The notes under the pieces are model-generated. The model did not search any database and had not been told where the DNA came from. It worked only from the letters and a program-made list of their open reading frames with translations. Below, one piece after another: positions 9,701-57,994 of a stretch of 64,000 nt of DNA. A program made the translations under genes and the position numbers. Each line of letters opens with the position of its first letter. The first letter of the stretch is position 1. Source of the stretch: Schmidtea polychroa (taxonomy: Eukaryota). The stretch lies in assembly GCA_044892525.1 (NCBI GenBank), contig CM097886.1, positions 32,178,001 to 32,242,000 on the forward strand, given 5' to 3'.

Positions 9701-11229
9701 ATAGGCTAATAGATATTATATATCTGACTTCTCGATAAAGATAATGAAGTGAACACGGTATCTCAAAATGATTAATAATTGATCTATCGAAATCTCGCCA
9801 AACATATCCAAGATTACCCCGATGATAATCAACTTCTGACCACATTTGATAAAGTTGCTTCAGTTCATACATTGTTTTTTGTCATTTGTTGAACAAGTAA
9901 ACAATAGGATTAGAAGTCGGTGCAAAATATGTAGAAAGTGATAAAATTTTAGATTATAAGATAATCATTTGATTTATAGATTGATTTCAAGAGATTGGTT
10001 TCAAGAGATCTTATAATTGTATAATTTCTCTCACTTAATACATATTTTGCAGCTAAGACTTGTCTTGTTATTTATTTGTCATTTAATTTATGCTGCTATC
10101 AAGAAACGATCATTTAAAATTGTTATAATAATAATTATTAGAAGCTGTTAAAATATCTTCTAAATTATTTTTTAAATCTAGTTCAAAAGTTAACGTCATA
10201 ATTCCAAGTATTTATTTAATGAAATATTGTATAATTTCCAAACAAATTTTCAGCGTTGAATAAAATATTTCAAAAAACCATTTATTAAAATTTCGATATT
10301 TAAAATATATTTATTTAAAAATGATCCGGTTAAAAAGCTTGTTTAATTTAAAAATTTAAAAATTTCAGTTTAAAAATTATTTTCAAAGTTATTTTAAATA
10401 GTCAATTATTTATCATTTAAAATTATCTTAATAATTTTTTGAAATATATAACTCTCAGCTGAAAACACCTCACAATAATAATAAACAATTAAATGATAAT
10501 TTAAGCATTTTGCTGCGAAGTATATATTTAATAAAATGAAAGAATTTTCAACTATAAAAATAATCCTTTTTATAGAAAATTCTTTCATTTTATTAATTGT
10601 AAATGCTCAGCAAAATGCTTAAATTATTATTTTGTTGCTTAACACTTTAATACTGCTACCAANNNNNNNNNNNNNNNNNNNNNNNNNNNNNNNNNNNNNN
10701 NNNNNNNNNNNNNNNNNNNNNNNNNNNNNNNNNNNNNNNNNNNNNNNNNNNNNNNNNNNNNNNNNNNNNNNNNNNNNNNNNNNNNNNNNNNNNNNNNNNN
10801 NNNNNNNNNNNNNNNNNNNNNNNNNNNNNNNNNNNNNNNNNNNNNNNNNNNNNNNNNNNTTCTTTATTTAAATTACATTTTATTTATTTATTTAAAATAA
10901 CAAATCTATTTTAAATTACTGCCGACTGCGCACATTGAAAACGAATATTTCTGTAATTTCAATATATGTCTTTCTAAATTTTATTTATGATTTTCATGAG
11001 TAGAAATCTCTCAGTTTCTTACTGTTTTAAAAATTTCTTCTTTTCATTCAAGAGAAATTATTGATTTTATTTATTAAAAGTTTAAAATATTATAAAATAA
11101 AAATATGAGAATTCCCATAAATTTGAATAATAAATCCAATAAATAAATACAAATTTTTCCTATAAATTTAAATAAATAAATAAAATTATATATTATATAT
11201 TAAATTTAATTTAAATTCAAATTCAAATT

Positions 11230-34791: not shown

Positions 34792-37019
34792 TGACAAGGA
34801 CTATCTTATAGTCGAAAATTCTTTCATTAAATACATTATTTGCCGCAAAGGCTTAAATTATCATTTTATTGTTTTAAATAATAAATGCTGCTANNNNNNN
34901 NNNNNNNNNNNNNNNNNNNNNNNNNNNNNNNNNNNNNNNNNNNNNNNNNNNNNNNNNNNNNNNNNNNNNNNNNNNNNNNNNNNNNNNNNNNNNNNNNNNN
35001 NNNNNNNNNNNNNNNNNNNNNNNNNNNNNNNNNNNNNNNNNNNNNNNNNNNAAGGCTTTAGGATAACTCTGTGTTCAAAATATAAAAAATGTATTTGGAT
35101 GTCTATACGTACCCCATTATAACTTTAATTATTCGTTTTTTAATTTTTATATTAATAGAATTTTGTAGTTATTTTCAGCGCTCTTTAAGACGCATGGAAA
35201 TTTAGTGAAAATAACTCGTTACAAACCATAATATTAATTTTATTTATAGATAAATAACTGATAAATAAACAATCAATTTAATTGGTAGAAATTTCAGATT
35301 AAAATTCCTGTAACTTCACAATGATTGACTTAAGAATATCTGCTCATGACACACCTTGAACTTAAAAAAGATCCCACTTATATTGTCTAAAGAAAACTCG
35401 GTTGACTTTCAAGTCTTTCTATATAAATACGCTATTTATCAATTTTGTAACCATGAAATAATAAATTAGAAATTCATCATTATGACGAGCAGGGCCTCCT
35501 GTAAAAGATTCACATTGGACGAATAATTTGAAATAGCTGTATTATTAGTATGGTACAAATTGCGATCTTTAAATGTAATGCAAAAAGCTCCACAAATAAG
35601 TGTATATTGAAATTTGAAATAATAAAAAAGTTATAATCAATTTTTAAGAATATTTGTTAGAGCCTCAACAACACGTAAAGGCGTCAAAATTAGAGATAAA
35701 ACCTTTTGATAATTTTGTTGATGAGTTTCGTAGTTGAATTGTTAAAAATTTATTGTATAATATTTTATTGTATTAAATTTATTAATGTTTTAGAATCTCT
35801 TCAAACAAATGACTACTTCTTATAAAGGTTGTATTAATATTATAAAATCTTGTATTCAAATCAACGTCTGCTTTAACATTTGTTATCTCATTTTTATTAA
35901 AATCATTTATTGAAAAATCTTTGTAAATTTAGCCAGAAATTTTATTATTGTTCTTTATTAAATTCTTTCAATAAAATAAATCTTTTGAAACTTTGTTATT
36001 CATGATATATTCGATTCGTTGCAAGAGCGTATATCAGTACTAACATGGGAGCTCTTGTTGATAATTAATAAGCAGGAATTTTTTTTGTGCCTTTAAACAC
36101 ATTTTCAATATTTTTCATCACATATTTTACATATAAATTCTGATTTTGAATTAAATTTACTTTACTTGTTTCAATTGTTTTCTGTTAACAGATATTATAT
36201 CCTTGAATAACTGGACAAGTATTGTGTCCTTTAAATTAATTCATCAAAGTTCTTGGGTCCCGGGAAATTTTACAGACATTTTCAAATGAAAATTGAATAT
36301 GGTAAACTTTTTTGGCTAGAATATATTAATAGTATTATTAGTATAGATTGCTATATTTGGATGTATTTTGAAACCTGAAATAATTATTCTGTTGCAAATA
36401 ATTTCTAATGATTTTAACCTTTTAAAAGAATTAAAGTTAAATCATGAAATATTTTATTTAATAAAAATTTCAAAATGGTTTTTCATAAAATAATTTTAAT
36501 TTGAACTAATAGGAAAAATATCAGTAAAATAAAACCTGAAAATGACATGAAAAAATTATTTTAATAAACTTAAAAGCTGTAACCAAAAAAGATGAAACAA
36601 TAAAAAAACATAAGAAAAAAGGAGTNNNNNNNNNNNNNNNNNNNNNNNNNNNNNNNNNNNNNNNNNNNNNNNNNNNNNNNNNNNNNNNNNNNNNNNNNNN
36701 NNNNNNNNNNNNNNNNNNNNNNNNNNNNNNNNNNNNNNNNNNNNNNNNNNNNNNAATATGTATTAAATGAGAAAATTTTAGACTATAAGACAATCCTTTT
36801 CAATCCTGAGAGATTGTAATACTTATAATAAAGGATTATGATATATTATAAGAACTTTTTTTAATTGTCACCCCTGATTTCATTTCAACTGACATTGTAT
36901 TTATTAAAAAACTTGGCTATGAATCAGTAAAGATATAAAAAACACCGATATCTTTATTGGTTCATAGTCAAGTTTTTTAATAAATTCAATTATGATATAC
37001 ACTATAAAACAGAAAATAT

Positions 37020-37385: not shown

Positions 37386-37869
37386 ATAACTCTAATACTA
37401 ATAATAATATTATTATTAAACAAAATAATTTGATATTTTTAAAATAAAATGATTAATTCTGTTTAAACAACATGAAAAAGAAATGTCATTTATAATTCAT
37501 GAAAATAATTGAGCGATCATTGCTACCTGTCATGCTGTTGCTATCAAACATTATAATGCCTGTTACCGCCCATAAATGTTTGATGATTATTATTTTATTG
37601 TTTTTTTATGATCATTAAATTTTTTATAGTAAAAAAATTAAGTTTTTGTTTAAAAATAATTTTAAAATGAAAGCAATTTTTTTATAATTTGATTAATAAT
37701 TTTATTATCATTTTAACTGATGTATATTTTTTATTTGTTTTACTGATAAAGATTAAAAAAATAAAATTAATTTTACAAAATCATAAAACTGAATAACTTG
37801 TTTTTATTTTTTAATTAGAACCATTTTTCATTCAAGTCGTTCCTCAAAACATCATAAAAATAATTGATT

Positions 37870-38228
37870 TATCAATGTGAGGTGTTTTCAGCTTAGAATT
37901 AAATATTTCAATGATTTATTAAAATAATTTTAAATGATAAATAATTGCTTATTTAAAATAACTTTTAAAAACATTTTTTAATTGAACTTTTTAAATTGAA
38001 ATTTTTAAATTCTTAAATTAAAAAATTAAACAAGCTTTTATTAGTAAATCATTTTTAAATAAACATATTTTAAATATCGAAATTTTAATAAATGGTTTTT
38101 GAAATATTTTATTCAACGCTGAAAATTTGTTTGGAAATTATACAATATTTCATTAAATAAATACTTGGAATTATGACGTTAACCTTTGAACCGGATTTAA
38201 AAAATAATTTAGAAGATGTGTTAGCAGC
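37870..38228. repeat. Dispersed AT-rich repeat body
   Basis: Reverse complement of about 10140-10470. A further fragment lies at 42144-42225. Confidence 0.8.
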
Positions 38229-38753
38229 AAGGAGACAAGTTTGGCAGAGGATTTACAATCTGCTGTCTTATAGACAGACGAGTGAGGAGCCCCATAAATA
38301 TTTTACTATCATAGACGAGTTAGTCGATAAAATATTGGGACATGAGTTAAACAAGGAAAGTTTAATAGAATATCTGCTGGTACACTGTGCAGCCGAGAAG
38401 ACTTTGAAGCGAGAATTGTGTCTAAGTGACACCAAAGGAACAACAGAAGTAAAGAAAAAAATCAAGAAGTTACACGAATCTCGTGTAGTTGCAGAAGAGA
38501 TCTACGCAGTGAGAGAAAGAAGGTCAGAACAGAATATAACAAGAAGTTACAGAGACGCGGTAACAAATCAAGCAAGAAATATTGTATCACCAAGATATAA
38601 TAGCGAGCCGAGAGAATATCGAGAAGAAAGACCGAACAGAACTAAGAACGAATGTTGGATATGTCACAAGGTAGGACATTTCAGTAGAGATTGCATAACA
38701 AAGTAGGCAGTTACATGTTTTAGAAGTGGAAGACAAGGACATGTAAGAATGTA
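38229..38753 (+). mobile_element. Ty3/gypsy gag, 5'-truncated, with CCHC knuckles; interrupted by the 38754 insertion
   Basis: CWICHKVGHFSRDC, then a stop, then VTCFRSGRQGHVRM. The first ~19 codons of the tracked ORF at 38173 come from an adjacent repeat, not gag. Confidence 0.85.
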
Positions 38754-41405
38754 AGATCCGATGACAACGCTAAAGATTTTTGGTAAAAGTCCCCAGAGCT
38801 TAGTAGAATTACTTCATATAACATTCACTAGCACTGGGGCAGAAATCAATGAGTTCTTTATTGCTTTTCAGCTTTTTAACTATTTTTCAGGAATCATTGA
38901 AATGTCGAAGGATCTCCGAACTGCTTGCTGGGATTGTATTGGCTCCAATATTCGAGATATAAGCCAAAATACATATAGATATGCTGACAAGCTCATCTCG
39001 GGATGTTTTGTAATTGAAAACCTGGTCCGAGAACAGCATATAGAATTCCTGGATGCATTCGAATCTGCTATAAAAATATGGCAATCTAACGTAAATTATA
39101 ATCAAAATTACATTACTTTTAAGAATAATAATTCGTTAGAAAAACATGCTTTTTTCAAGAAAAATTTTAAATTTAAAGAAAAAATTAAAGAAAAAATTAA
39201 TTTTAAAGAAAACCCCAATAATTTTAAAAACACCTTAGATAAAATTAAGATAAGTAACGAAAATTTTATTAAAAAACAAGTTAATAAAAATAAAAATAAA
39301 AACGTGAAATATTTTAAAAATACCTTTGATAAAGCTAAAATAAGTAATGAAAATTTTAAAAATTTACAATTCCCTGGAAAAAAGCATGTTAATAATTGGT
39401 TCTTTAATGATTTCAGAAATAAAGAACTTTATAAAAAATCCAAAAAATCCAGAAATAAAAAACGAAAATTAAAGAAAAAACAAATTCAGAATAATTTGTT
39501 TATAAATCCTTCAAAATCCAGATCCGATGACAACGCTAAAAATTTTTTTCGTCCTCCTACGGAGGACGAAAATATTTTACGCAGCTCGCCGGCCTACGGC
39601 CGACTCACAGCAAACGTAAGCCCCGAGACCGAAATATTCAAACACAGCTCAACGGCCTTCGGCCCACTCCAGAAACCTGCTTATTATAGGTCAACGGTAT
39701 CCACGATGGCAAATTCCACAAACAAACCTCTTTATGGTAAACCAAAACCAACCATCAAATTATGGAACCCGGAATCCTCAATTTATATAAACTTACCAAG
39801 ACCCCACTATACTAGTCCTATTCCAAAGAAACCACTTACTATCCAAGAACTCTTTAATCGTAAGAAACGTAAAATTAAACATAATATGCGTTTTGAATAC
39901 CTCTTAACAAATAAGGAACCAATTTATTCAGAAATCATAATCAGCAATACCAATGTACCAGATTCGAAAATCACCAATCTTACTAACATCAACCTAATAG
40001 ACGATAGACCGATAAAAAATGAAAACGACACTTACTTACCAGCTAAAAAGAACACCGATAATGCCGATAATACCAAACTGACACCGAAAACTTCAGAACC
40101 AGATAAAATTAACTTATCGAAAGTAAGAAACATTGGTCTAATTGACGATAGCATAATCCAACATGAAATTAATAATGATGATAGCATAACCGAACCAGAA
40201 AGTGACAGTGATGATGAATATTACCCCCATGTAGAAACTAATTCGGATGATAACTGGGACCCCTACATCTTTAGAGATATTAAAGAACGCCATAACCTTT
40301 TGTTTGGTACTATAATTACAATAAACGGCGTAAAACCACAATGCTAAACCTTGATGACTCTTGAACAAATAGTTTACTATAATTTACTTTCTGACAGATA
40401 TGATGACAGACAGAGCCTTTTTTCAGAAAACAAAAATATTAAAAAACTTGAAAATATGCCAAAAATAGAAAAACCATTCAATGATAGACCAATCGTAGCG
40501 AACCCCGATGATGCTTTAATCCTCGAAGAGAAAATGTTATTGAATATGTTCTTTGAAATCCAGGGCACAAAAGGCAATATATCTGAACTTAACTATAGTG
40601 AATATTTGACAGACATGCATAAAGAATACTTTTCAAATAGAATTAAAAATGTAAAAAAATTCCGACCTGACCTCATTGATAAAAGAATTTCCCATAAAAT
40701 TAAAATGATTGATAAAATACCCAATTTAAAAGAAACTTCAAAAAATACCATATTATCAAATATTCATAAGAAAACCCCGAAAAAAGCTAATAAAAAAAAG
40801 AAGAAGGGAAAACGTAATTAAGTGATTATATTATCAATAGGTCAATGTAGGAGTCCTTGTATGGGCTCCGCCTAACTGATAATACCTTTTTAGTCGTTAA
40901 TATTTATAATATAAAACCTATTCCCTTAAACCTCCTTACCTTGAACACCATTCCTTCCAATCCTTACTATAGTATATTGTATAATATCTGACGGCTACAA
41001 AAATCCCAAATGGAGTCTTCTTACTCCGAATTATTAAATTCATTTAGATATGTGTGTGCACAGAATGCTTGCTGACAGAATACTTTATGGAGAACCGCGT
41101 TTGAAGCCAGAATTCGAAGACTGATATTGGGAAAGAAAAAACTAAACCACCGCTTGCTGATAAAATACTTGATTGTGAAAGAAACTATTAATCTCCTACG
41201 TAATGTATGCCCAGGATGATTGATGATAAAATACTTAGAAAAAAAAAACCACGTTTGATGCCAGAGTTCCTAACTCCAGCATCCAAAGAGAACAAACATA
41301 AAAATTTCAGTTTATTTAAGGGTGAGAACCGTTCTCTCCTTCGGCCTTGAGCCAGTTCGATTTACATAAAATAAAATTTGATTTTTTTTTTTTTTTTTTT
41401 TTTTT
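38754..41405 (+). mobile_element. Unclassified 2.65-kb insertion carrying a 686-codon frame (38761-40821) with one internal TAA and a terminal poly(T)
   Basis: Flanked by TA (38752-53 and 41406-07). Removing it and one TA restores the gag knuckle frame GHVRM*CP. No TIR. T25 run at 41382-41406. No recognisable domain. Confidence 0.75.
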
Positions 41406-42143
41406 TAGTGTCCATAGATGCAGAGAAAGGTAGTCGAATATTATGCGTGTGATACCCCGGGACACGTGAGAAGAGATTGTCAAAAAATAAGATATACGAG
41501 GTGTAGCTTGTGAGTTCATAAAGAGGCAGATTGCTACACAAATTTGGAGAGAATGAGATATCGGAGAATCAATGAGAATTTTGGAAGACAACAAGAGCGA
41601 CACGAAGCAGGGCATGGTTATCAAGGAACGAGAATGAAAAGAAGACAAGCAGACAAGAGATACGTAGCATTCATAGACAAACCAAGTGATGAAAGAATCG
41701 AAGATAAATACAGAGAATACCAAAATATCAACAGCGATGCTGACTCCCAAATTATTAATTATTATAATAAAAGTAAAATATCATGTATTATAGAAAAGGA
41801 TGTGAAAGATACAGTTCCTAAGGAGAGAAAAGTTTGAAGAGGAAATGGTAAGAATTGGAACAATTGAAAGTAGAAGTAGAAATTGTGTATAACAAGCTAC
41901 AGGGAAGACCTAGTGTAACAGTAATGGTGAATGGGGAAATTTTCAACCGGAGCACGAATAAACGTAATGAGTGTGAGCTGTTATAACAAGTTACGAGGAC
42001 AACAATTGATGAGAAGCAACGATAAGTTACAATGTACAAACGAAAGTACAGAGAGGCATGCATTCCCAATGCCAAACATAGACGAGATATTAGATTTATT
42101 AGTAGGGTCCGTTTATTTTAGCTCAATCGATCTTGGTAATGCA
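41406..42143 (+). mobile_element. Continuation of the decayed gypsy element (gag knuckles, protease, internally deleted RT)
   Basis: CP...YACDTPGHVRRDC...TRCSL*VHKEADCYTNLE; TGARINVMS (protease); HAFPMPNIDEILD...YFSSIDLGNAY (RT). Confidence 0.85.
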
Positions 42144-42225
42144 TATTGTGAAGTGTTTTCAGCTGAGAATTAAATATTTCAATGATTTATCAAAATAATT
42201 TTAAATTGTAAATAATTGACTATTA

Positions 42226-45200
42226 AACAGCGATGCTAACTCCCAAATTATTAATTATTATTATAAAAGTAAAATATCATGTATTATAGAAAAAGATGTG
42301 AAAGATACAGAGGTAACGGAAGAGGAAAATAATGTAATAAGGAAAGTAAACAGATTCATAAAAAAGGATTTTGCAGAAAGAGAAAGAGACAAAATACAAA
42401 TACTCACATTAGATGAATGGAAAAATGATATTATTAGTTATGATAAAATGCAAGGCCGGCCAAGTGTAACTATTAGAATACAAGATCAGAATATGGAATG
42501 CTTGCTCGATACAGGAGCTACAGTAAATGTCATGAGTTGGAGCAAATTTGAGAAACTTAAAGATGTAGAACTAACAACAGCGACTGATTCATTTAGATGT
42601 GCAAATAATAATGTTTTAGAAACGAAAGGTAAAGCAATATTAGAAATAGGAATAAATTGTAGGAAAAGAAGGGTAAAGTTTACGATAGTTAGATATATGA
42701 CTCCAGAGGTAATTGGTGGTCTAGAGTTGCAAAAACAATTTGGTATACAACTAAAATGGCCAGTAGAAGAGGTCGAGAAAACGAAGCAAGAGTATATATG
42801 CAGTATCGAAGCCAAATTTGAAAAGACAATAACGGAGATGGAACGATTTCAAAGAGCAAAGAATACTTTGTAAATAACGCGAACTACTGAACATTGTAAA
42901 AAAGAATCAAAATGTTTTTATGGCTGATAAATGGGACATTGGCTGCACAAAGCTGTTGAAGCATAAAAAGAAACTCAAGGAAAACAAGTTAAATATTAAA
43001 CCTTGGAGACAACCAGTCAACTTGGAAGGTAAAATAGATGAAGCGATAATAAACTTATGGGAAAACAATATTATCAAAAAGTGTAATTCGCCATGGAACA
43101 CTCCAATAATATGTGTCTGGAAGAAAGAAAAGTAAGATATCAGATTATGCCTTGATTTCAGGCAATTAAACCTAGTAATAGGGAGTCAGGCGTTCCTTAT
43201 GGCGAATATAGCAGAGATGTTAGATAAATTTGGTGAAGCAAAGTATTTCAGTTCGATAGATCTTGGAAATGCATGTTATCAAGTAGAACTAGAAGACGAA
43301 TCGAAGTTAAAAACGGCGTTTTCAACCAAATCAGGTCAATACTGTTTTAACAGAATGCCATTTGGAATAGCAGCGGCACCAGGTACATTTCAGGAACTGA
43401 TGGGAAAAGTATTAATGGGTACGAGATATGCAGTATACCTAGACGATATGTTGATATTTACAGAAACAATCAATCATCACTAAGAAGTTTTAAATGAAGT
43501 GCTGGATAAAATTGAAAGGGTTGGCCTTAGGATAAACCCTGAAAAGCGCCATATCCTTAAGGGGGAAGTCAAAGTTTTATGTCACATAATCAACAAAGAT
43601 GGAATACAGACGAACCCGTCAAAGCTAGACGCGATTAAATCATTTGAAAAACCAAAATTTGTTAAGAAGCTGAGAAGCTTCCTAGGAATATACAATTACT
43701 ACAGAAGATTTATAAAGGAATACGTAAAAAAGCCAAGAGTTTTAGAAGAGCTATGTGGATTAAATAACAAAAAATTAATTTGGACTGACGGATGCAACAT
43801 CGCATTCGAAAATATGAAAAATGCTTTAATGTCCTAACCTATTCTAGGGTTTCCAGATTTCGAAAGAGAATCCATTCTAGATACTGGATGCGAGTTTTGA
43901 CCCGATTGGAGCAGTATTATCACAGAAAGACGACAACTGTTGCGAAAAGGTTATAGTATACGGTTCTCATGCAATGAGCAATCGTGAAAAGGGATATTGC
44001 ATAACAAGGAAAGAGTTGCTGGCAATCTATTATTTTTGTCAACACTTCAATCATTATTTATATGGAAAACGGTTCATTTTGAGAACGGACCATAAAGCTA
44101 TCACATTTATGTTATCCACAAAGAAACCAATAAAAACGCAATTTCGGACATGGATTAACTACCTCAGTAGTCTGGATATTAAAATAGAGTATAGAAAAGG
44201 TACTGATCATGCAAATGCAGATATGTTGTCAAGGAGTACATGTGGAACATGCACACAATGTTCATTGGCACACGAAGATGTGAAAGTGGAAAGAATGGAA
44301 ACCCGAAGAATAAACACGATGGAAAACGTTGAAGATTATAAGTGGCAAAAAGATAATACAGAAATAGAACAAATAAAAAAGGAAAAAGCACAGGGTTCAA
44401 GTTGAAAATTTTTACTGGTAGACAACGTGGTTAAAACTATGGAGGGTAAGATATGGATACCTAGAGAAAAAAGACAAGAAATGATAAAGAGTATGCCTAT
44501 TTTGCTATCACACGCAGGAGCAGAAAAGGTGACAAAATATGTAGCGGACAATTACGATATTGGTGACATAAAAGGATCAGTAAAAGAAACGATTTGATCA
44601 TGCGAGGCATGTCAAAGAACGAAAGTTGTGACAACAAAGATGAAGGAAGAGACAATAAAACTGACAGCAGAGGAGCCGTGGCCCATTACAGGAAACATTC
44701 AGAAAGAAAAGATATATAGTCGCAATGATTGATCAATTCAGCAGATATATCTCTCTGACTGTTGTCGCTAAACAGGATGATGAAACGTTGAAGGAAACAA
44801 TACTACAAAAATGGATTCTTAGATTTGGAGCACCAAAGGAAATTCACACAGATTGTGGAAAAGTATTTGAATTTAAGACTATGAAAGATTTTACAAAATC
44901 AATGGCAATTACTCTATGCTTTTCAAGTCCATACCACCATAATACAAATGGTGTAATAGAACGTCAATTCAGGACAATAAGAGACTATTTAGATGCATCA
45001 TTAAAAGAAAGAAGTAGAACAGATTGGGCAGAGATCATACCAGAGATTGAATTTACCATGAATGCAACATTTCAGAAATCAATTGGGCGAAGCCCCGCAG
45101 AAGTAATATTTGGAAGAAAAATAGCTCGAGAACAATTTCATAGTAAAGCGCCTATTTCACAAAAAGAAGACACCCGAGAAACAACGCAAACAAAAAGATC

Positions 45201-45230
45201 ATTCAATATTGGAGACGAGCTTCTAATAAT
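42226..45230 (+). mobile_element. Second decayed Ty3/gypsy pol (PR-RT-RH-IN), no LTR seen
   Basis: LLDTGATVNV; CNSPWNTP; YFSSIDL...FNRMPFG...YLDD; ELLAI...LRTDHKA; IHTDCG...SPYHHNTNGVIER. Many stops and frameshifts. Confidence 0.95.
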
Positions 45231-46087
45231 CAACTTTTTGTTAACAACAAAAAATTTATTTTTTAAATCAAAATTAAAATTTTTTTAGAAGACATTACAT
45301 GAAAAATGATTTTTAAGTTTAATTGTAAGGAATAATAATTTCAATTGATAAGAAAATTAATAAAATTAAAAGCAATGTGAGAATTATAAATCAAATTACG
45401 CAAAACAATAATATATAAGTATAACCGTGTGACAAATATAATAAAACCCGCAGTACTGGGATATCTAGATAATTTCTGATAAAGAAATACAATTATAAAT
45501 ATGCCTGTATTTCAGTATTAAAAAAGAAAAAAAAGAGGCCATAAAGAACAAAAAATCTGTTTTTTTGTAATTCATATGAAATAGGTTACACATTCTGCAT
45601 GCTGATGTCAAAATAAATTTTAGATGATTTTCTTGTTTTAATTAATTGTTTGAATAATAATTCCGATAATTCTTGTTTCTCTTGTAACTGCTGAACAATT
45701 ATTTTAACTTTACGGATATTACTTTCACAATATTTTTAGGCAATTTTAATAAATTTAGTACTAATTAAAATGAAGGGTTAAAAACAGTTGTCTATTTGGA
45801 AGATATTGTAATATTTTTCAAAACATTCGAGATTCAATACAAAGAATTAAAAAAACATTTCAGAAAATAAAAAATTAACCCAAATAAATGTAATTTTATT
45901 AAACATGAATATAAATTCTTAAGGTGTATTTATAATAAAGATGGAATGCAAACGAATAAAAATAAATTATAAATTATAAATTATCGAAAATATTTTAAGA
46001 TCGAAATGAATGAAAATGTTAAAAACTTTTTAAAACTAACGTTTTATTATCGAAAGCTTATCAAAAATTATACATAATATGCTAGAA

Positions 46088-46882: not shown

Positions 46883-47947
46883 TTCTAGAGTATCGGATAA
46901 ATTATTTGAATTAAATCAAAAAAAAATATATGATCTGAAGCATGTGAAGCTTTGTTTCGAGGTTTTAAAAAGTAATACAAGTATTTTACAAAATTATTTT
47001 AGAAACTTGTGTAAGCTTCAAAAGAACTGGTGTAATGTGATTATGAAAGGAGTAATTGTTTTCGTTCACATGTTCTAAATAAACATGAATTAGTATATTC
47101 CATTTTTAGAAAGCTTAGATGAAGAACTAACTACGGGGCAATAACTTTCACGTTGAAAACTAAAATTTCTATAACTCCTCAATTTGAAAATCGGATAAGC
47201 AAGCTAAACAGTTTGAATATCATATAGATAATATCATGAGAATGCAGATGCACTATCAAAAAATGAATGCCAGTTGTATGGAGTCCATACTATGGACAAT
47301 GTCAAAAGATGAATGAAGACTCAACAGTGGGAAAATTAATGCCACTACCACTACCACTACCACATATAGGAATATTATATAGATAATATCATGAGAATGC
47401 AGATGCATTATCAAAAAATGAATGCCAGTATGGACAATTGTCGTATGGACAATGTGAAAAGATGAATGAAGATTCAACAGTGGGAAAATTAAAAACAAAG
47501 ATTTTATTTATAATGTAGGAAATATATTTCATTTTGACAAAAGGATTCAAGAGAAATGTTGGATATTAGATTAAATAAATAACATTGAAAATATATGAGG
47601 TGGAATCGTAAGAATGTTTGTAATAGTGAAAGGTAAAATGTAAATACAATTTGGCAGATAATTTTTAATCATCGTCAAAACTCACAAACTGTTATTCCAC
47701 GCAGGTTTAACCAGGTAAATGGATATTTCTACGGGAAATATACCGGCTGAGAAAATAGAACTCATTTTAATAAATGTATAAAATGTGAAAACACGCGATA
47801 AAGTAAAATAAGAACGGCTTGCTCTACTACTGTCACTTTGAATTTATCAAGTTTGGCACCCAAATTATCAGCTTAATTTAAAATTGATTTAATTTATAGA
47901 AACATTTCTTTTTAAATTTAAAGAAAATTTAAATTTTATCTTATCAG

Positions 47948-49560: not shown

Positions 49561-50590
49561 TAACATATTTTTTTATTCTTTTCCAAAATTAGTTTATTAT
49601 CTCAACAAAATCAATGTCACGAAATTACAGATATGTAGTATTAATATTTTAAGATATATTTGCAAAACAAAATCGCTTCGTTTGGAAAAAGGCATGGCGT
49701 ACGGATGAAGAGTAATTTTAAAAAATAATATGTTAATAGAATCAGAACATGAAAAAATTCGATTAATTGATGCATTCGAAAACGGCGAAGATTACTATGA
49801 ATTTGAAAGATTGGTGAGAATGTATTAAAAAATTAATGTGTTTGGCAATTACTTTAAGAAATAATTCAAAAATTGATCTGACTTACCTTATATCAAAATA
49901 ATTCCAAATAATTCTAAATTAAATTGCATAAAATTCCTAAAAAAAACCTTTAAATTAATTAAAAATAATTTATAATATAAATGTTGACTAAAAGTAATAT
50001 TTAAGAACTTGAATAATGATCTCATAATTATATAAAATCAAAATCCAAGCCTTAAAATTTACCTAAAATTAAAAATCTTACATGAAAGCCATTTCTAAAA
50101 TTGAATAAATGAAGTTCTCATAAATGGTGAGTCACTTAAAACTTTATTATAGAAACTTTTATATTTCGGAATTAGGTGTATGTGCTAAACGGGACAAGCA
50201 AAGGTTTAATGATGAAGGATTTTTTAAGGCCATGTATTAGTATCTATAAATGATTGATACATTAAAAAACTACTCACAGATATTTGTGGTGGTATACTGA
50301 AAACTATTTATGGTGGAATAGGGTAACTGAATGTTACTGGAATACATTACTTAATTAAAAGTGAAACAGGCCAGTTTATTTAAAAAATTAATTCATTTCT
50401 TTGCATAATTATTTGTACCAAACATTTTAAAAATCTGATGAATNNNNNNNNNNNNNNNNNNNNNNNNNNNNNNNNNNNNNNNNNNNNNNNNNNNNNNNNN
50501 NNNNNNNNNNNNNNNNNNNNNNNNNNNNNNNNNNNNNNNNNNNNNNNNNNNNNNNNNNNNNNNNNNNNNNNNNNNNNNNNNNNNNNNNAG

Positions 50591-51853: not shown

Positions 51854-52329
51854 TATAACACAGTTGTGAATTCGAGGGTTCCTATTATCTTATTCATTAA
51901 AAACTTATTTTTAATAAACTTTGATCTTCAAAACCCAAGTAATTGAAAAATTTTAAATCTTCTCATAGAATCTGATTTTTCCGATTTGATTGATGAATAA
52001 AATCATTAGTTTGAAATTCTTTATCTTCTAATGCGCATGATAGTGCAGTATTCATTGTTCTTTATTTTATAAATAATGAATAAAAATGACCTACCTTAGG
52101 ATGTTGTTTTATTAAACAATTTATTTATTAATATTTATTAAAAAGTTGACTATGATTCAATAGTAAATTTTTTAATAAATACAATGTCAATTAAAAAGAA
52201 GTCAGGGGTGAAAATTAAAAAAGTTCTTATCATATTGTATTGCTTCATTTTGAATGAAAGTACGTAAAAAGGGATACCATCTAAATATCCGCACGGCTAC
52301 GAAGACGGGCATCGATACGGATATATTAT

Positions 52330-56460: not shown

Positions 56461-56667
56461 AATTAACCTATTTGAATATTTTCAAAATTTATATAGTAAA
56501 ATATTTTCATTGTCAAAAAATGTTGATAAAGTGTGAAATATTCAGAATTACAAAAATATAGACATCACATATAGATATAAATGTAGATATCACAACGCAA
56601 AATGATCACATTATAAAAACTTCAAATTTCACTACTGATTTCTTTTCCATTGACATTGTAATTATTA

Positions 56668-56738
56668 AAAAGCTTGACTATAAATCAGTAAATATATCAA
56701 AAACATCGATATATTTACTGATTCATAGTCAAGCTTTT
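56668..56738. repeat. Hairpin repeat, family B
   Basis: aaaagcttgactat.aatcagtaaatatatc / inverse. Related copies near 36905-36985 and 27170-27210. Confidence 0.8.
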
Positions 56739-57994
56739 CAATAAATTATCACATTACTTATCTGATCATTTTTTGTTTCTTTTTTAAATCCTTGGTATCA
56801 ACTTCATTGGCTTTGAGCCTATGTGGCACTCAAATCTTATGAGGGCTAATTAACCCACTCCCAGCCATTCGATCAAGCCGAAACATTGATGGATTGACTC
56901 ACTAGCAATGACAATGCGTTTTATTGAATTTTGCTGCCACGGTCACACACAAATACAATAGCACATCAAATTTGTGTTAACTTGAATTTTGAAAAAAATT
57001 ATGAATTTCAAAATGATTTGAAACCGTGAGATTTTGCATATAAAGAATTTATTATAAAAACTGTGTTTTGATGGATTCCCTGCCTGGGCTACCCTGCGCT
57101 GTCCGGGGCTATTTTGAAGATTAAAAAAATATTACAAACGGCCCCGTGCAGTGATGTTAAACTAACAAAGAAAAAGATTATTATATGAAAATGTCTCTAT
57201 TTTCTTCATTTCTGTACAAAAATCACAATCCCACTTTATCTCACCCCATCCAGACTTAGCGTACCAGGAGAATAAAATAAACAAAAGAGATTAAAAAAAT
57301 TGAAAAAAAAATAATAAACGTTCTAAAATCGTCTAAAGTCGAATTTTCATGTTATTTTTTCGAATAGAAATTTTGACATATTTTTAGAATTAGAAGTTTA
57401 TTCGGTCTTCTACGTTTTAACTTCAAAAATTAGTGTATATATCCGGACATACAAACACACATACTTTTCTTTTTATTTGTTAAATGTGTTCATCTTCTAA
57501 AGCATACAATAATTCTCATTATCTTACAATAATTTGTAGTGTAAAACGATGGAATTAAAGAACCTAAAGAGGGTAGTAAATATAGTACATAAAGAAAAAT
57601 ATTTCCTTTTAATGTATTGCTAATGTATTAAATACTTTTGTTCTCAACTTGTGTTGGAATATATTCTTTAATTTAAATAATAAAATTCCAGCAGTAGAAA
57701 CTAATGTCTTGGGCATGAAACTTCTTATAACTGTTTTTGGAATTCGGAAAAGAGTGTGGTTTGTAGTGCCTTAGTTTTCTTAGTTTATTAATTTGCACAG
57801 TATCCTACAATCGTTGCAATTTTATACAGCGTCAAAATTTACATAATTTAAAAATAAAAGGTGAAACTGTCCAAAATAATAAAATACATCGAAAGCCCCT
57901 AAATATCCAAAAAAAACAACTCTTAAAATGTTAGTAGTACAGAAAAGTTATCAACTTTTTTAACAACTTTTTAAACATTTATTTTATTAAAAAC

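What the first reader, a model, noticed from the sequence alone, without database searches (positions are those of the whole stretch)
38754..41405. Unclassified 2.65-kb mobile or virus-like element with a large orphan ORF, inserted into a gypsy zinc knuckle
Seen: the segment is flanked by TA on both sides, and removing it rejoins gag in frame (GHVRM-*-CP). It has no TIRs or LTRs. It ends in T25 on the ORF's sense strand, whereas retroposed mRNAs and LINEs end in poly(A). Its 686-codon frame is nearly intact while the surrounding gypsy is full of stops, so it looks younger. I see no RT, integrase, DDE, YR, HUH or helicase motif. Inference: a non-autonomous member of an undescribed TE class, an accessory ORF of a Penelope-like element, or an endogenised viral sequence. 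The right boundary is ambiguous by a few T.
Basis: partly seen in the sequence, partly recalled or inferred. Interest (0 to 1): 0.78.

Follow-up and report, generated by a model that had tools for sequence, protein, structure and literature searches.

The report
Orphan-ORF, T-tailed insertion in a dead gypsy
A 2.65-kb piece of foreign DNA with a long protein-coding frame that matches nothing known sits exactly inside a zinc knuckle of a decayed gypsy retrotransposon; it looks like several RNA copies joined head to tail, but with one copy in hand its family cannot be named.

Summary
A related gypsy with an intact gag (metagenome contig L002) shows that the window carries exactly 2654 extra bases (2652 plus one TA) inside the second CCHC knuckle. 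The insert has no TIRs or LTRs and ends in T25, the only homopolymer above 11 bases in 64 kb. Its 686-codon frame has one stop and no frameshift. It is far longer than composition allows and has a coding-type base periodicity.

The frame has no relative in Pfam, NCBIfam, PHROGs, PDB sequences, IMG/VR, the word search or a full HMMER scan of 1.84 billion proteins. The host genome itself is not in those protein sets, so other copies in that genome remain untested.

One copy lies exactly at the left end and the other 766 bases in. Both copies end in T runs (T5, T7), and the first holds the frame's ATG. So the insert is built of pieces joined head to tail, each closed by oligo(T).

My best reading (confidence 0.4) is an enzyme-less, RNA-mediated insertion made by a template-jumping reverse transcriptase. 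It resembles Penelope-like partial tandems or LINE-made chimeras, but has T tails instead of A tails. The Helitron and Tc1/mariner membership tests failed. The Crypton test was inconclusive, and nothing supports a viral origin. It is a lead of moderate interest.

The parts
38754..41405 (+). The insert: 2652 bases, or 2654 counting one copy of the flanking TA. The boundary can slide by up to 2 bases.
   Evidence: Collinear gag halves against L002. GC skew is negative in the insert and positive in the gypsy.
38752..38753 (.). Left flanking TA (target dinucleotide or 2-base microhomology).
   Evidence: Sequence. The knuckle spacing matches L002 only if one TA is kept.
41406..41407 (.). Right flanking TA. 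Its T is the last T of the run.
38754..38781 (+). R1: 28-base repeat copy at the exact left end. It ends in T5 and contains the ATG of the long frame.
39520..39547 (+). R2: second copy (27/28 identical), 766 bases downstream, read in a different frame. The T run that closes it (T7) extends to 39549.
38761..40821 (+). Long reading frame: 686 sense codons, broken once by an in-frame stop, no frameshift. It has an N-terminal helical part (about 120 aa), a K/N-rich low-complexity part, a stretch covering R2 and the hairpins, and a C-terminal part predicted to be disordered with a basic tail.
   Evidence: No relatives found.
39546..39572 (+). Perfect 12-bp hairpin with a 3-base loop, directly after R2. 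Two weaker GC-rich hairpins in a roughly 39-base degenerate repeat follow, up to about 39660.
   Evidence: I7; z = -3.2 for 39520-39700.
40822..41381 (+). Non-coding 3' region, with stops in all frames.
   Evidence: Its fold is not better than shuffles.
41067..41290 (+). Three degenerate direct repeats of about 70-85 bases, each opening with the same 19-base motif.
   Evidence: D4, D8; 3 matches against 0.11 expected.
41382..41406 (+). T25 tail on the ORF's sense strand.
38173..41837 (+). Host element gag (three CCHC knuckles), split by the insert. It is broken by 4 in-frame stops and by the insertion.
42298..45288 (+). Host element pol (protease, RT, RNase H, integrase, in Ty3/gypsy order). 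It is broken by about 7 in-frame stops and several frameshifts.
41815..42310 (+). A second rearrangement of the same gypsy copy: 496 extra bases framed by an 85-base duplication and holding scraps of the element's own RT region and leader.

Best explanation
The insert is an enzyme-less product of reverse transcription, made of two or three RNA-derived pieces joined head to tail. It entered an already dead gypsy copy at a TA by target-primed synthesis or an equivalent break-primed route. A reverse transcriptase supplied in trans did the work, of non-LTR or Penelope-like type.

Proposed steps (all inferred):
1. Synthesis began at the oligo(U) end that now reads T25.
2. It ran to the 5' end of that template.
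3. It jumped to the oligo(U)-closed 3' end of a 766-base unit and copied that unit.
4. It jumped once more onto the 3' end of the same kind of unit and stopped after 28 bases.
5. The product was joined to the target with 0-2 bases of overlap.

An alternative partition reads the 28 bases as a common 5' end of two modules. It also needs a template jump.

The long frame is then a fusion. It starts in the 28-base partial copy, runs through the first coding module (helical plus K/N-rich), crosses the repeat and hairpins in a stretch where stops are few in all three frames, and continues in phase into a second coding module. The protein or proteins are lineage-restricted. At best they could be a nucleic-acid-binding ORF1- or gag-like accessory protein, which is inferred from composition only.

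Shown: the precise insertion, the composite build, the T runs at every joint, the coding signal and the absence of relatives. Inferred: the RNA intermediate, the jumps, the trans-acting enzyme and any function of the protein.
For: - Clean insertion with no loss of gypsy sequence and at most a 2-base duplication.
- A homopolymer tail at one end only, unique in 64 kb.
- No TIR or LTR.
- The 28-base repeat lies at the exact left end and 766 bases in. Both copies end in a T run of different length. The only two T runs of 7 or more in the insert are the one closing R2 and the terminal tail.
- The repeat carries the frame's ATG, as the pseudo-LTR of Penelope partial tandems does (PMC3846280).
- A perfect palindrome sits at the joint. 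A palindrome at the 5' end of a pLTR is also reported in PMC3846280.
- Non-LTR reverse transcriptases add untemplated bases and jump between templates (PMC8857657).
- Poly-T tails are an accepted tail type in SINEs: 26 of 61 grass families (PMC5585668).
- The sense strand is A-rich, like that of the gypsy beside it.
- The insert has one stop and no frameshift in 686 codons. The gypsy has about 11 stops and several frameshifts in about 1500 codons. This fits a later arrival.
- The same gypsy copy holds a second patchwork of its own pieces.
Against: - The tail is T, not A, on the coding strand. No ORF-bearing retroposon with such a tail is known to me.
- Internal T5-T6 runs argue against polymerase III transcripts, so the source of oligo(U) ends is unexplained.
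- No reverse transcriptase, endonuclease or ribozyme is present in the insert. I did not look for a partner element in the rest of the window.
- There is only one copy, so shared termini and variable tails among copies are untested.
- T5 and T7 are short, and their place at the joints could still be chance. My rough estimate is below 1% (2 such runs in 2652 bases).
- If the 766-base unit is a separate RNA, its frame has no stop of its own.
- A flanking TA is also what a TA-targeting DNA transposon leaves.
Confidence: 0.4

Rival explanations
1. It is a non-autonomous DNA transposon moved by a transposase or recombinase encoded elsewhere. It could be a TA-targeting cut-and-paste element with decayed ends, a rolling-circle (Helitron-like) composite in which one terminus is present twice after end bypass, or a tyrosine-recombinase (Crypton-like) element integrated in tandem at a short core.
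For: TA on both sides and a precise junction. There are no LTRs. A terminal 28-mer is present twice, as in Helitron composites with repeated ends or in tandem site-specific integrations. There is a subterminal hairpin and a 3' array of degenerate repeats that could be binding sites. The frame may be made of captured pieces.
Against: No inverted termini at any stringency used. The target is T|A, not A|T or T|T. The ends are not 5'-TC / 3'-CTRR on either strand, and no hairpin lies 10-12 bases from the 3' end (termini as I know them from the literature). There is no DDE, Rep/helicase or tyrosine-recombinase domain. A DNA mechanism does not explain a 25-base homopolymer at one end, or T runs at the inner joints.
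Confidence: 0.2
2. It is not a mobile element. It is a patch of host or other genomic DNA or cDNA, carrying a lineage-specific gene or pseudogene, that was copied into a double-strand break in the gypsy by end joining or microhomology-mediated template switching.
For: Only 0-2 bases of overlap at the junctions. Only a single copy was seen. It holds an orphan ORF with nuclear-protein-like composition. The same gypsy copy holds another patchwork rearrangement.
Against: The left end coincides to the base with the start of an internal repeat. The right end is a unique T25. Both points argue for defined termini rather than random break points. A processed host mRNA would end in A, not T.
Confidence: 0.15
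3. It is an endogenised viral sequence: DNA copies of two RNA segments or subgenomic RNAs of an unknown virus that share a terminal sequence, joined by a cellular reverse transcriptase.
For: A shared 28-base terminal sequence on two otherwise unrelated modules. A structured region follows it. The proteins are orphans, and the insert is associated with an LTR retroelement.
Against: No similarity to any viral or other protein in 1.84 billion representatives, IMG/VR, PHROGs, Pfam or PDB sequences. There is no polymerase or capsid signature. The insertion into DNA is precise rather than a copy-choice scar. The K/N-rich composition matches the host's AT-rich genome.
Confidence: 0.07
4. It is a derivative of a Penelope-like element: an accessory or ORF1-type gene framed by a much reduced pseudo-LTR and moved by a Penelope RT/GIY-YIG enzyme. 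This is a special case of the best explanation.
For: It has partial-tandem logic with the start codon inside the repeat, a palindrome at the joint, N-rich coding stretches, nesting in another retroelement and a microhomology-type junction. All of these are described for Penelope in PMC3846280 and seen here.
Against: The repeat is 28 bases, not about 180-220. There is no inverted copy, no RT or GIY-YIG domain and no hammerhead ribozyme. A T25 tail is not in the description of Penelope that I read.
Confidence: 0.1
5. It is an assembly chimera at one or both junctions.
For: The region is rich in repeats and the window has nine N runs.
Against: The flanks resume the same gag codon to the base, which a chimera would not do. 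No N run lies within 2 kb of the insert.
Confidence: 0.02

Closest known systems
Penelope-like elements in partial tandem (pseudo-LTR organisation)
   Same: A 5'-truncated upstream copy is joined head to tail to a full unit. The repeat contains the first codons of the ORF. There is a palindrome at the unit's start, N-rich coding stretches, junctions by microhomology or a short duplication, and frequent nesting in other retroelements (PMC3846280).
   Different: The repeat is only 28 bases. There is no RT/GIY-YIG ORF, no hammerhead ribozyme and no inverted copy. An unrelated 1.86-kb unit follows, and the insert ends in T25.
Chimeric retrocopies and end-to-end template jumps made by non-LTR reverse transcriptases (L1-made chimeras, R2 enzyme)
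   Same: Unrelated RNA-derived pieces are joined in the same sense, there is one homopolymer tail at the 3' end, the insertion into the target is precise, and no enzyme is encoded (mechanism: PMC8857657; L1 chimeras from my own knowledge).
   Different: The tail is T, not A. The flanking duplication is at most 2 bases rather than 7-20. The joints carry short T runs.
Poly(T)-tailed SINEs
   Same: The homopolymer T tail on the element's sense strand is an accepted tail type (PMC5585668).
   Different: SINEs are under 800 bases, non-coding and headed by a tRNA, 7SL or 5S-derived promoter. None of this is seen here.
ORF1-only non-autonomous LINE derivatives (HAL1 type; from my own knowledge)
   Same: A retroposon keeps only a non-enzymatic, helical or basic ORF and depends on a partner.
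   Different: HAL1's ORF1 is recognisably L1-like and the element has an A tail. The ORF here matches no ORF1 family.
Tc1/mariner and its MITEs
   Same: TA on both sides of the insert.
   Different: No terminal inverted repeats and no DDE transposase. One end is a homopolymer.
Helitrons
   Same: No TIRs and no duplication beyond 2 bases, the elements are often composite with repeated termini, and they often carry chimeric ORFs.
   Different: The target, the terminal dinucleotides and the position of the 3' hairpin do not fit on either strand. There is no Rep/helicase.

Membership tests
Ty3/gypsy LTR retrotransposon (the host element) | gag with CCHC knuckles, then protease, RT, RNase H and integrase in that order | tested here: met
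   Pfam hits on the pieces: zf-CCHC, RVP, RVT_1, RT_RNaseH, rve. It is 66-75% identical at DNA level to an intact relative, L002.
Ty3/gypsy LTR retrotransposon (the host element) | Pair of long terminal repeats | tested here: not met
   No repeat pair brackets 37.8-46 kb in blastn. This copy is probably truncated or too decayed.
Tc1/mariner | TA target-site duplication | tested here: inconclusive
   TA is present on both sides. It could equally be 2 bases of microhomology.
Tc1/mariner | Terminal inverted repeats | tested here: not met
   No inverted pair involves the two ends.
Tc1/mariner | DDE/D transposase, or ends shared with an autonomous partner | tested here: not met
   No DDE domain in the long frame or the three longest minus-strand ORFs. 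A partner cannot be searched for without the genome.
Helitron | Insertion between A and T without duplication; 5'-TC and 3'-CTRR ends | tested here: not met
   The empty site is ...TG-TA-GT... and the insert lies within the TA. The ends read AGATCC... and ...TTTGA(T)n; the reverse strand also fails.
Helitron | Short hairpin 10-12 bases from the 3' end | tested here: not met
   The nearest hairpin lies about 45 bases before the T run. The strong hairpin is internal, at 39546-39572.
Helitron | Rep/helicase ORF (autonomous copies) | tested here: not met
Non-LTR retrotransposon or LINE-made retrocopy | 3' poly(A) or simple-repeat tail on the sense strand | tested here: not met
   The tail is T25 on the ORF strand. 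On the other strand the A run would be at the 5' end.
Non-LTR retrotransposon or LINE-made retrocopy | RT (with or without endonuclease) ORF | tested here: not met
Non-LTR retrotransposon or LINE-made retrocopy | Variable 5' ends and variable tail lengths among copies | not testable with these tools
   There is only one copy and the host genome is not searchable.
Penelope-like element | RT plus GIY-YIG endonuclease ORF | tested here: not met
Penelope-like element | Pseudo-LTRs of about 200 bases, direct or inverted | tested here: not met
   There is only a 28-base direct repeat. Sizes are taken from PMC3846280.
Penelope-like element | Partial tandem with the ORF start inside the repeat | tested here: met
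   The ATG lies in R1, and R2 closes the 766-base unit.
Penelope-like element | Hammerhead ribozyme in the repeat | tested here: not met
   No Rfam match, even at E up to 1.
SINE | Polymerase III head (tRNA, 7SL or 5S) and length under 800 bases | tested here: not met
   No tRNA or Rfam match. The units are 766 and about 1860 bases and have internal T5-T6 runs.
Crypton / tyrosine-recombinase element | Tyrosine recombinase ORF; short identical core flanking the element | tested here: inconclusive
   No recombinase domain. TA could be a core. The right ends of the two modules are unlike each other.
Endogenous viral element | Protein similarity to an exogenous virus | tested here: not met

The most novel reading that the evidence does not exclude
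The insert represents an undescribed kind of flatworm retroposon. It would be ORF-bearing and enzyme-less, with units ending in oligo(T) instead of oligo(A). It would propagate as partial tandems in which a short terminal redundancy supplies the start codon, and its protein would have no relatives outside the lineage. A further-out form of this reading is that the 766-base unit comes from a circular or tandem RNA template, so that the frame runs past unit length.
Probability: 0.15. Interest if true: 0.75.

Novelty: new variant of a known kind. Interest (0 to 1): 0.45.

Why it matters
If other copies confirm defined ends and T tails, this would be an ORF-bearing retroposon that breaks the rule that coding retroposons end in A. 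That would point to a partner enzyme that primes on oligo(U), a mode so far noted mainly for some SINEs. It would also add a lineage-restricted protein to the poorly catalogued repeat content of very AT-rich flatworm-like genomes.

If it proves to be a one-off patch, it is still a clean example of how dead LTR elements collect template-switch products. It then has little wider weight.

Tried and rejected
- **Ciliate code (TAA/TAG as sense).** With TGA as the only stop, the gag-plus-insert frame opens over about 1000 codons, but pol stays broken. A metazoan miRNA family is present. Rejected.
- **Spliceosomal intron or introner.** The left junction makes a GTAAGA and the right end is T25 followed by AG. 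Splicing at those sites would remove 4 bases more than were inserted and shift the gag frame (read). Rejected as a way to restore gag.
- **Spliced leader.** I could not test whether the 28-mer is a planarian spliced leader. The papers I could open give no sequence, one paper is not held, and a literal text search found nothing.
- **Other places with the 28-mer.** There were none in IMG/VR. The one hit in metagenome contigs, L001 (58% GC), has no other similarity to the window and is a chance match. I did not take it for human and used it no further.
- **Inverted copies of the 28-mer 150-175 bases downstream.** These suggested a closing stem, but at up to 2 mismatches the counts equal chance. 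Dropped.
- **Structure.** AlphaFold2 without an alignment gave pLDDT 37 for the longer ORF piece and 45 for the N-terminal 120 aa. That is too low for a fold search, so none was run.
- **Sub-threshold Pfam matches.** DUF7288 scored 19 bits against a cut-off of 27 on the C-terminal module, and Tht1 scored 17 against 21. I treat these as leads only. Nothing is published on DUF7288 in the held library.
- **Exact-sequence look-ups.** The ORF pieces and the gypsy pieces were not on record.
- **gag word search.** No hits.
- **Host.** It is inferred only from the mir-753 match. From memory, that family is built on Schmidtea entries. The paper searches did not confirm this.
Full report
**1. Setting**

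The window is very AT-rich, about 25% GC, and has nine N runs that I left untouched. No standard-code ORF of 250 or more codons exists in it except the one in the finding. An Rfam match above the gathering score to the miRNA family mir-753 lies at 49998-50059 on the minus strand. From memory, that family rests on planarian (Schmidtea) entries. The paper searches did not confirm this, so "probably a triclad flatworm" is an inference.

**2. The host element**

Pieces around the finding hit zf-CCHC, retroviral protease, RVT_1, RT_RNaseH and rve in that order. This is a Ty3/gypsy element. No LTR pair was found.

The integrase piece finds only metagenome proteins, at 72% identity or less. The host genome itself is therefore not in the protein collections. 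This limits what "no relatives" can mean for the insert's ORF.

The best hit lies on contig L002 (5074 bases, ends overlapping by 162 bases). L002 carries an intact gag of 373 aa and an open pol.

**3. The insertion is real and precise**

- The two gag halves of the window align to L002's gag on either side of its second knuckle.
- At DNA level, L002 1736-2219 matches window 38269-38746 and L002 2228-2575 matches window 41409-41732.
- The pieces were aligned apart and not joined. The His-to-Cys spacing of knuckle 2 equals L002's only if 2654 bases are set aside, that is 38754-41405 plus one of the two flanking TA.
- A misassembly would not resume the same codon.
- GC skew is negative in the insert and positive in the gypsy.

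**4. What the insert contains**

*Reading frame.* It has 686 sense codons, one in-frame stop and no frameshift, and is in phase with gag-left.
- Its longest open stretch exceeds 500 codons. The maximum in 4000 composition-matched simulations was 171.
- Codon-position composition is coding-like. The other two + strand frames carry 15-43 stops per module.
- In composition it falls into four parts: a helical 120 aa; a K/N-rich 130 aa (48% K+N); a 62-aa stretch over the repeat and hairpins, where stops are few in all three frames (0, 1 and 3); and a 370-aa part predicted to be disordered, with acidic patches and a basic tail.

*The rest of the insert.*
- A 560-base non-coding region follows, with three degenerate 70-85-base repeats.
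- Then comes T25, the only homopolymer above 11 bases in 64 kb.

**5.

A 28-base direct repeat (27/28 identical) lies exactly at the left boundary (38754) and again at 39520. Its first 21 bases occur only at these two places in the window, against 0.00 expected by chance.
- Nothing else is shared between what follows the two copies.
- The two copies are read in different frames, so this is a nucleic-acid feature and not a protein repeat.
- The first copy holds the frame's ATG.
- Both copies end in a T run (T5 and T7). The insert has only two T runs of 7 or more: the one closing the second copy and the terminal tail.
- A perfect 12-bp hairpin follows the second copy directly.

The insert is therefore composite. 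There are two ways to partition it:
- (i) Two modules share a 5' end.
- (ii) A 28-base, 5'-truncated copy of the 3' end of a 766-base unit comes first, then that full unit, then a 1.86-kb unit. Each of the three pieces is closed by oligo(T).

I prefer (ii) because it explains why the repeat ends in T runs of unequal length. Reading (i) fits the open frame better. Both need head-to-tail joining of separate templates.

**6. Relatives of the ORF**

None were found. The two pieces were always searched apart.
- Pfam, NCBIfam and PHROGs.
- PDB sequences.
- Word search on the longer piece.
- Full HMMER scan of 1.84 billion representatives with the longer piece.
- IMG/VR.
- Exact look-ups.

Only sub-threshold Pfam matches appeared (DUF7288, Tht1). 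Structure prediction without an alignment was too poor to search with.

**7. Mechanism**

These features together are those of reverse-transcribed insertions:
- a single homopolymer tail;
- no inverted or long terminal repeats;
- a clean junction with 0-2 bases of overlap;
- pieces joined in one sense;
- a terminal redundancy that carries the start codon;
- a palindrome at a joint.

The redundancy and the palindrome recall Penelope-like partial tandems in particular (PMC3846280). Template jumping after untemplated addition is a documented property of non-LTR enzymes (PMC8857657).

The obstacle is the tail's base. It is T on the coding strand, and on the other strand the A run would be at the 5' end. 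T tails are accepted in SINEs (PMC5585668), but I know of none in coding retroposons. Internal T runs also argue against polymerase III transcripts. I give the RNA-mediated reading 0.4.

The rivals are listed separately:
- DNA transposon classes: the Helitron and Tc1/mariner membership tests fail, and the Crypton test is inconclusive.
- A one-off repair patch.
- A viral origin, which nothing supports.
- A chimera, which is excluded in practice.

**8. Age**

Against L002's intact ORFs, the gypsy shows about 11 in-frame stops and several frame changes over about 1500 codons. The insert shows one stop and no frameshift over 686 codons. The insert either arrived after most of the gypsy's decay or has been under constraint.

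**9. Limits and slips**

- I could not search the host genome, so copy number, shared termini and the partner enzyme are open.
- Slip: an earlier count gave the bounds of the two ORF pieces, which amounts to the place of the one stop. Several tool calls necessarily used those bounds as references.
- Slip: while reasoning, I read the gag junction codon by codon, stops included.
- Slip: while reasoning, I recalled from memory a few short motif strings, such as transposon terminal dinucleotides and promoter-box or leader consensus fragments. The terminal motifs named in the membership table are from my own knowledge.

Noticed in passing
window 49998-50059 (-): Full-length match to the miRNA precursor family mir-753 (67.8 bits, gathering score 62, E = 1.8e-13). 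It is the only Rfam hit in the window and the only clue to the host.
   Followed up: partly
window 41815-42310: The same gypsy copy carries 496 extra bases relative to L002. They are framed by an 85-base duplication (41730-41814 = 42226-42310, 96% identical). Inside are a scrap of the element's own RT region (42048-42155) and of its leader (42147-42227, 90% identical to 37876-37956). It looks like a template-switch patchwork.
   Followed up: partly
window 10144-10491 (-): A second, partial copy of the same gypsy family (leader plus the first 55 bases of gag, 86% identical to 37861-38228). It lies about 170 bases from an N run.
   Followed up: no
window 47215-47339 and 47370-47492: A tandem pair of about 125-base repeats (88% identical) downstream of the gypsy.
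   Followed up: no
window 36838-36986, 56602-56747, 52153-52235: Another dispersed repeat family (83-87% identical), present on both strands.
   Followed up: no
L002 1-5074 (JGI 3300036830, Ga0376669_0035003): A metagenome contig with a related gypsy whose gag, pol and integrase frames are all open. Its ends overlap by 162 bases (99% identical), so it is a circularly permuted or tandem assembly with a unit of about 4.9 kb.
   Followed up: partly
L003 (ENA ERZ25039515 contig_33250, 22 kb): A contig fetched through a distant integrase hit. It also carries a TBP-domain gene, a faint A32-type packaging-ATPase hit and a second rve gene. It may be a Maverick/Polinton-like or eukaryotic region and is unrelated to the finding.
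   Followed up: no
window 38741-38756: The left junction creates an 8-base tandem (ATGTAAGA twice), because the insert's first three bases repeat the three bases that follow the earlier ATGTA in gag. I take this for chance (about 1 in 64).
   Followed up: yes
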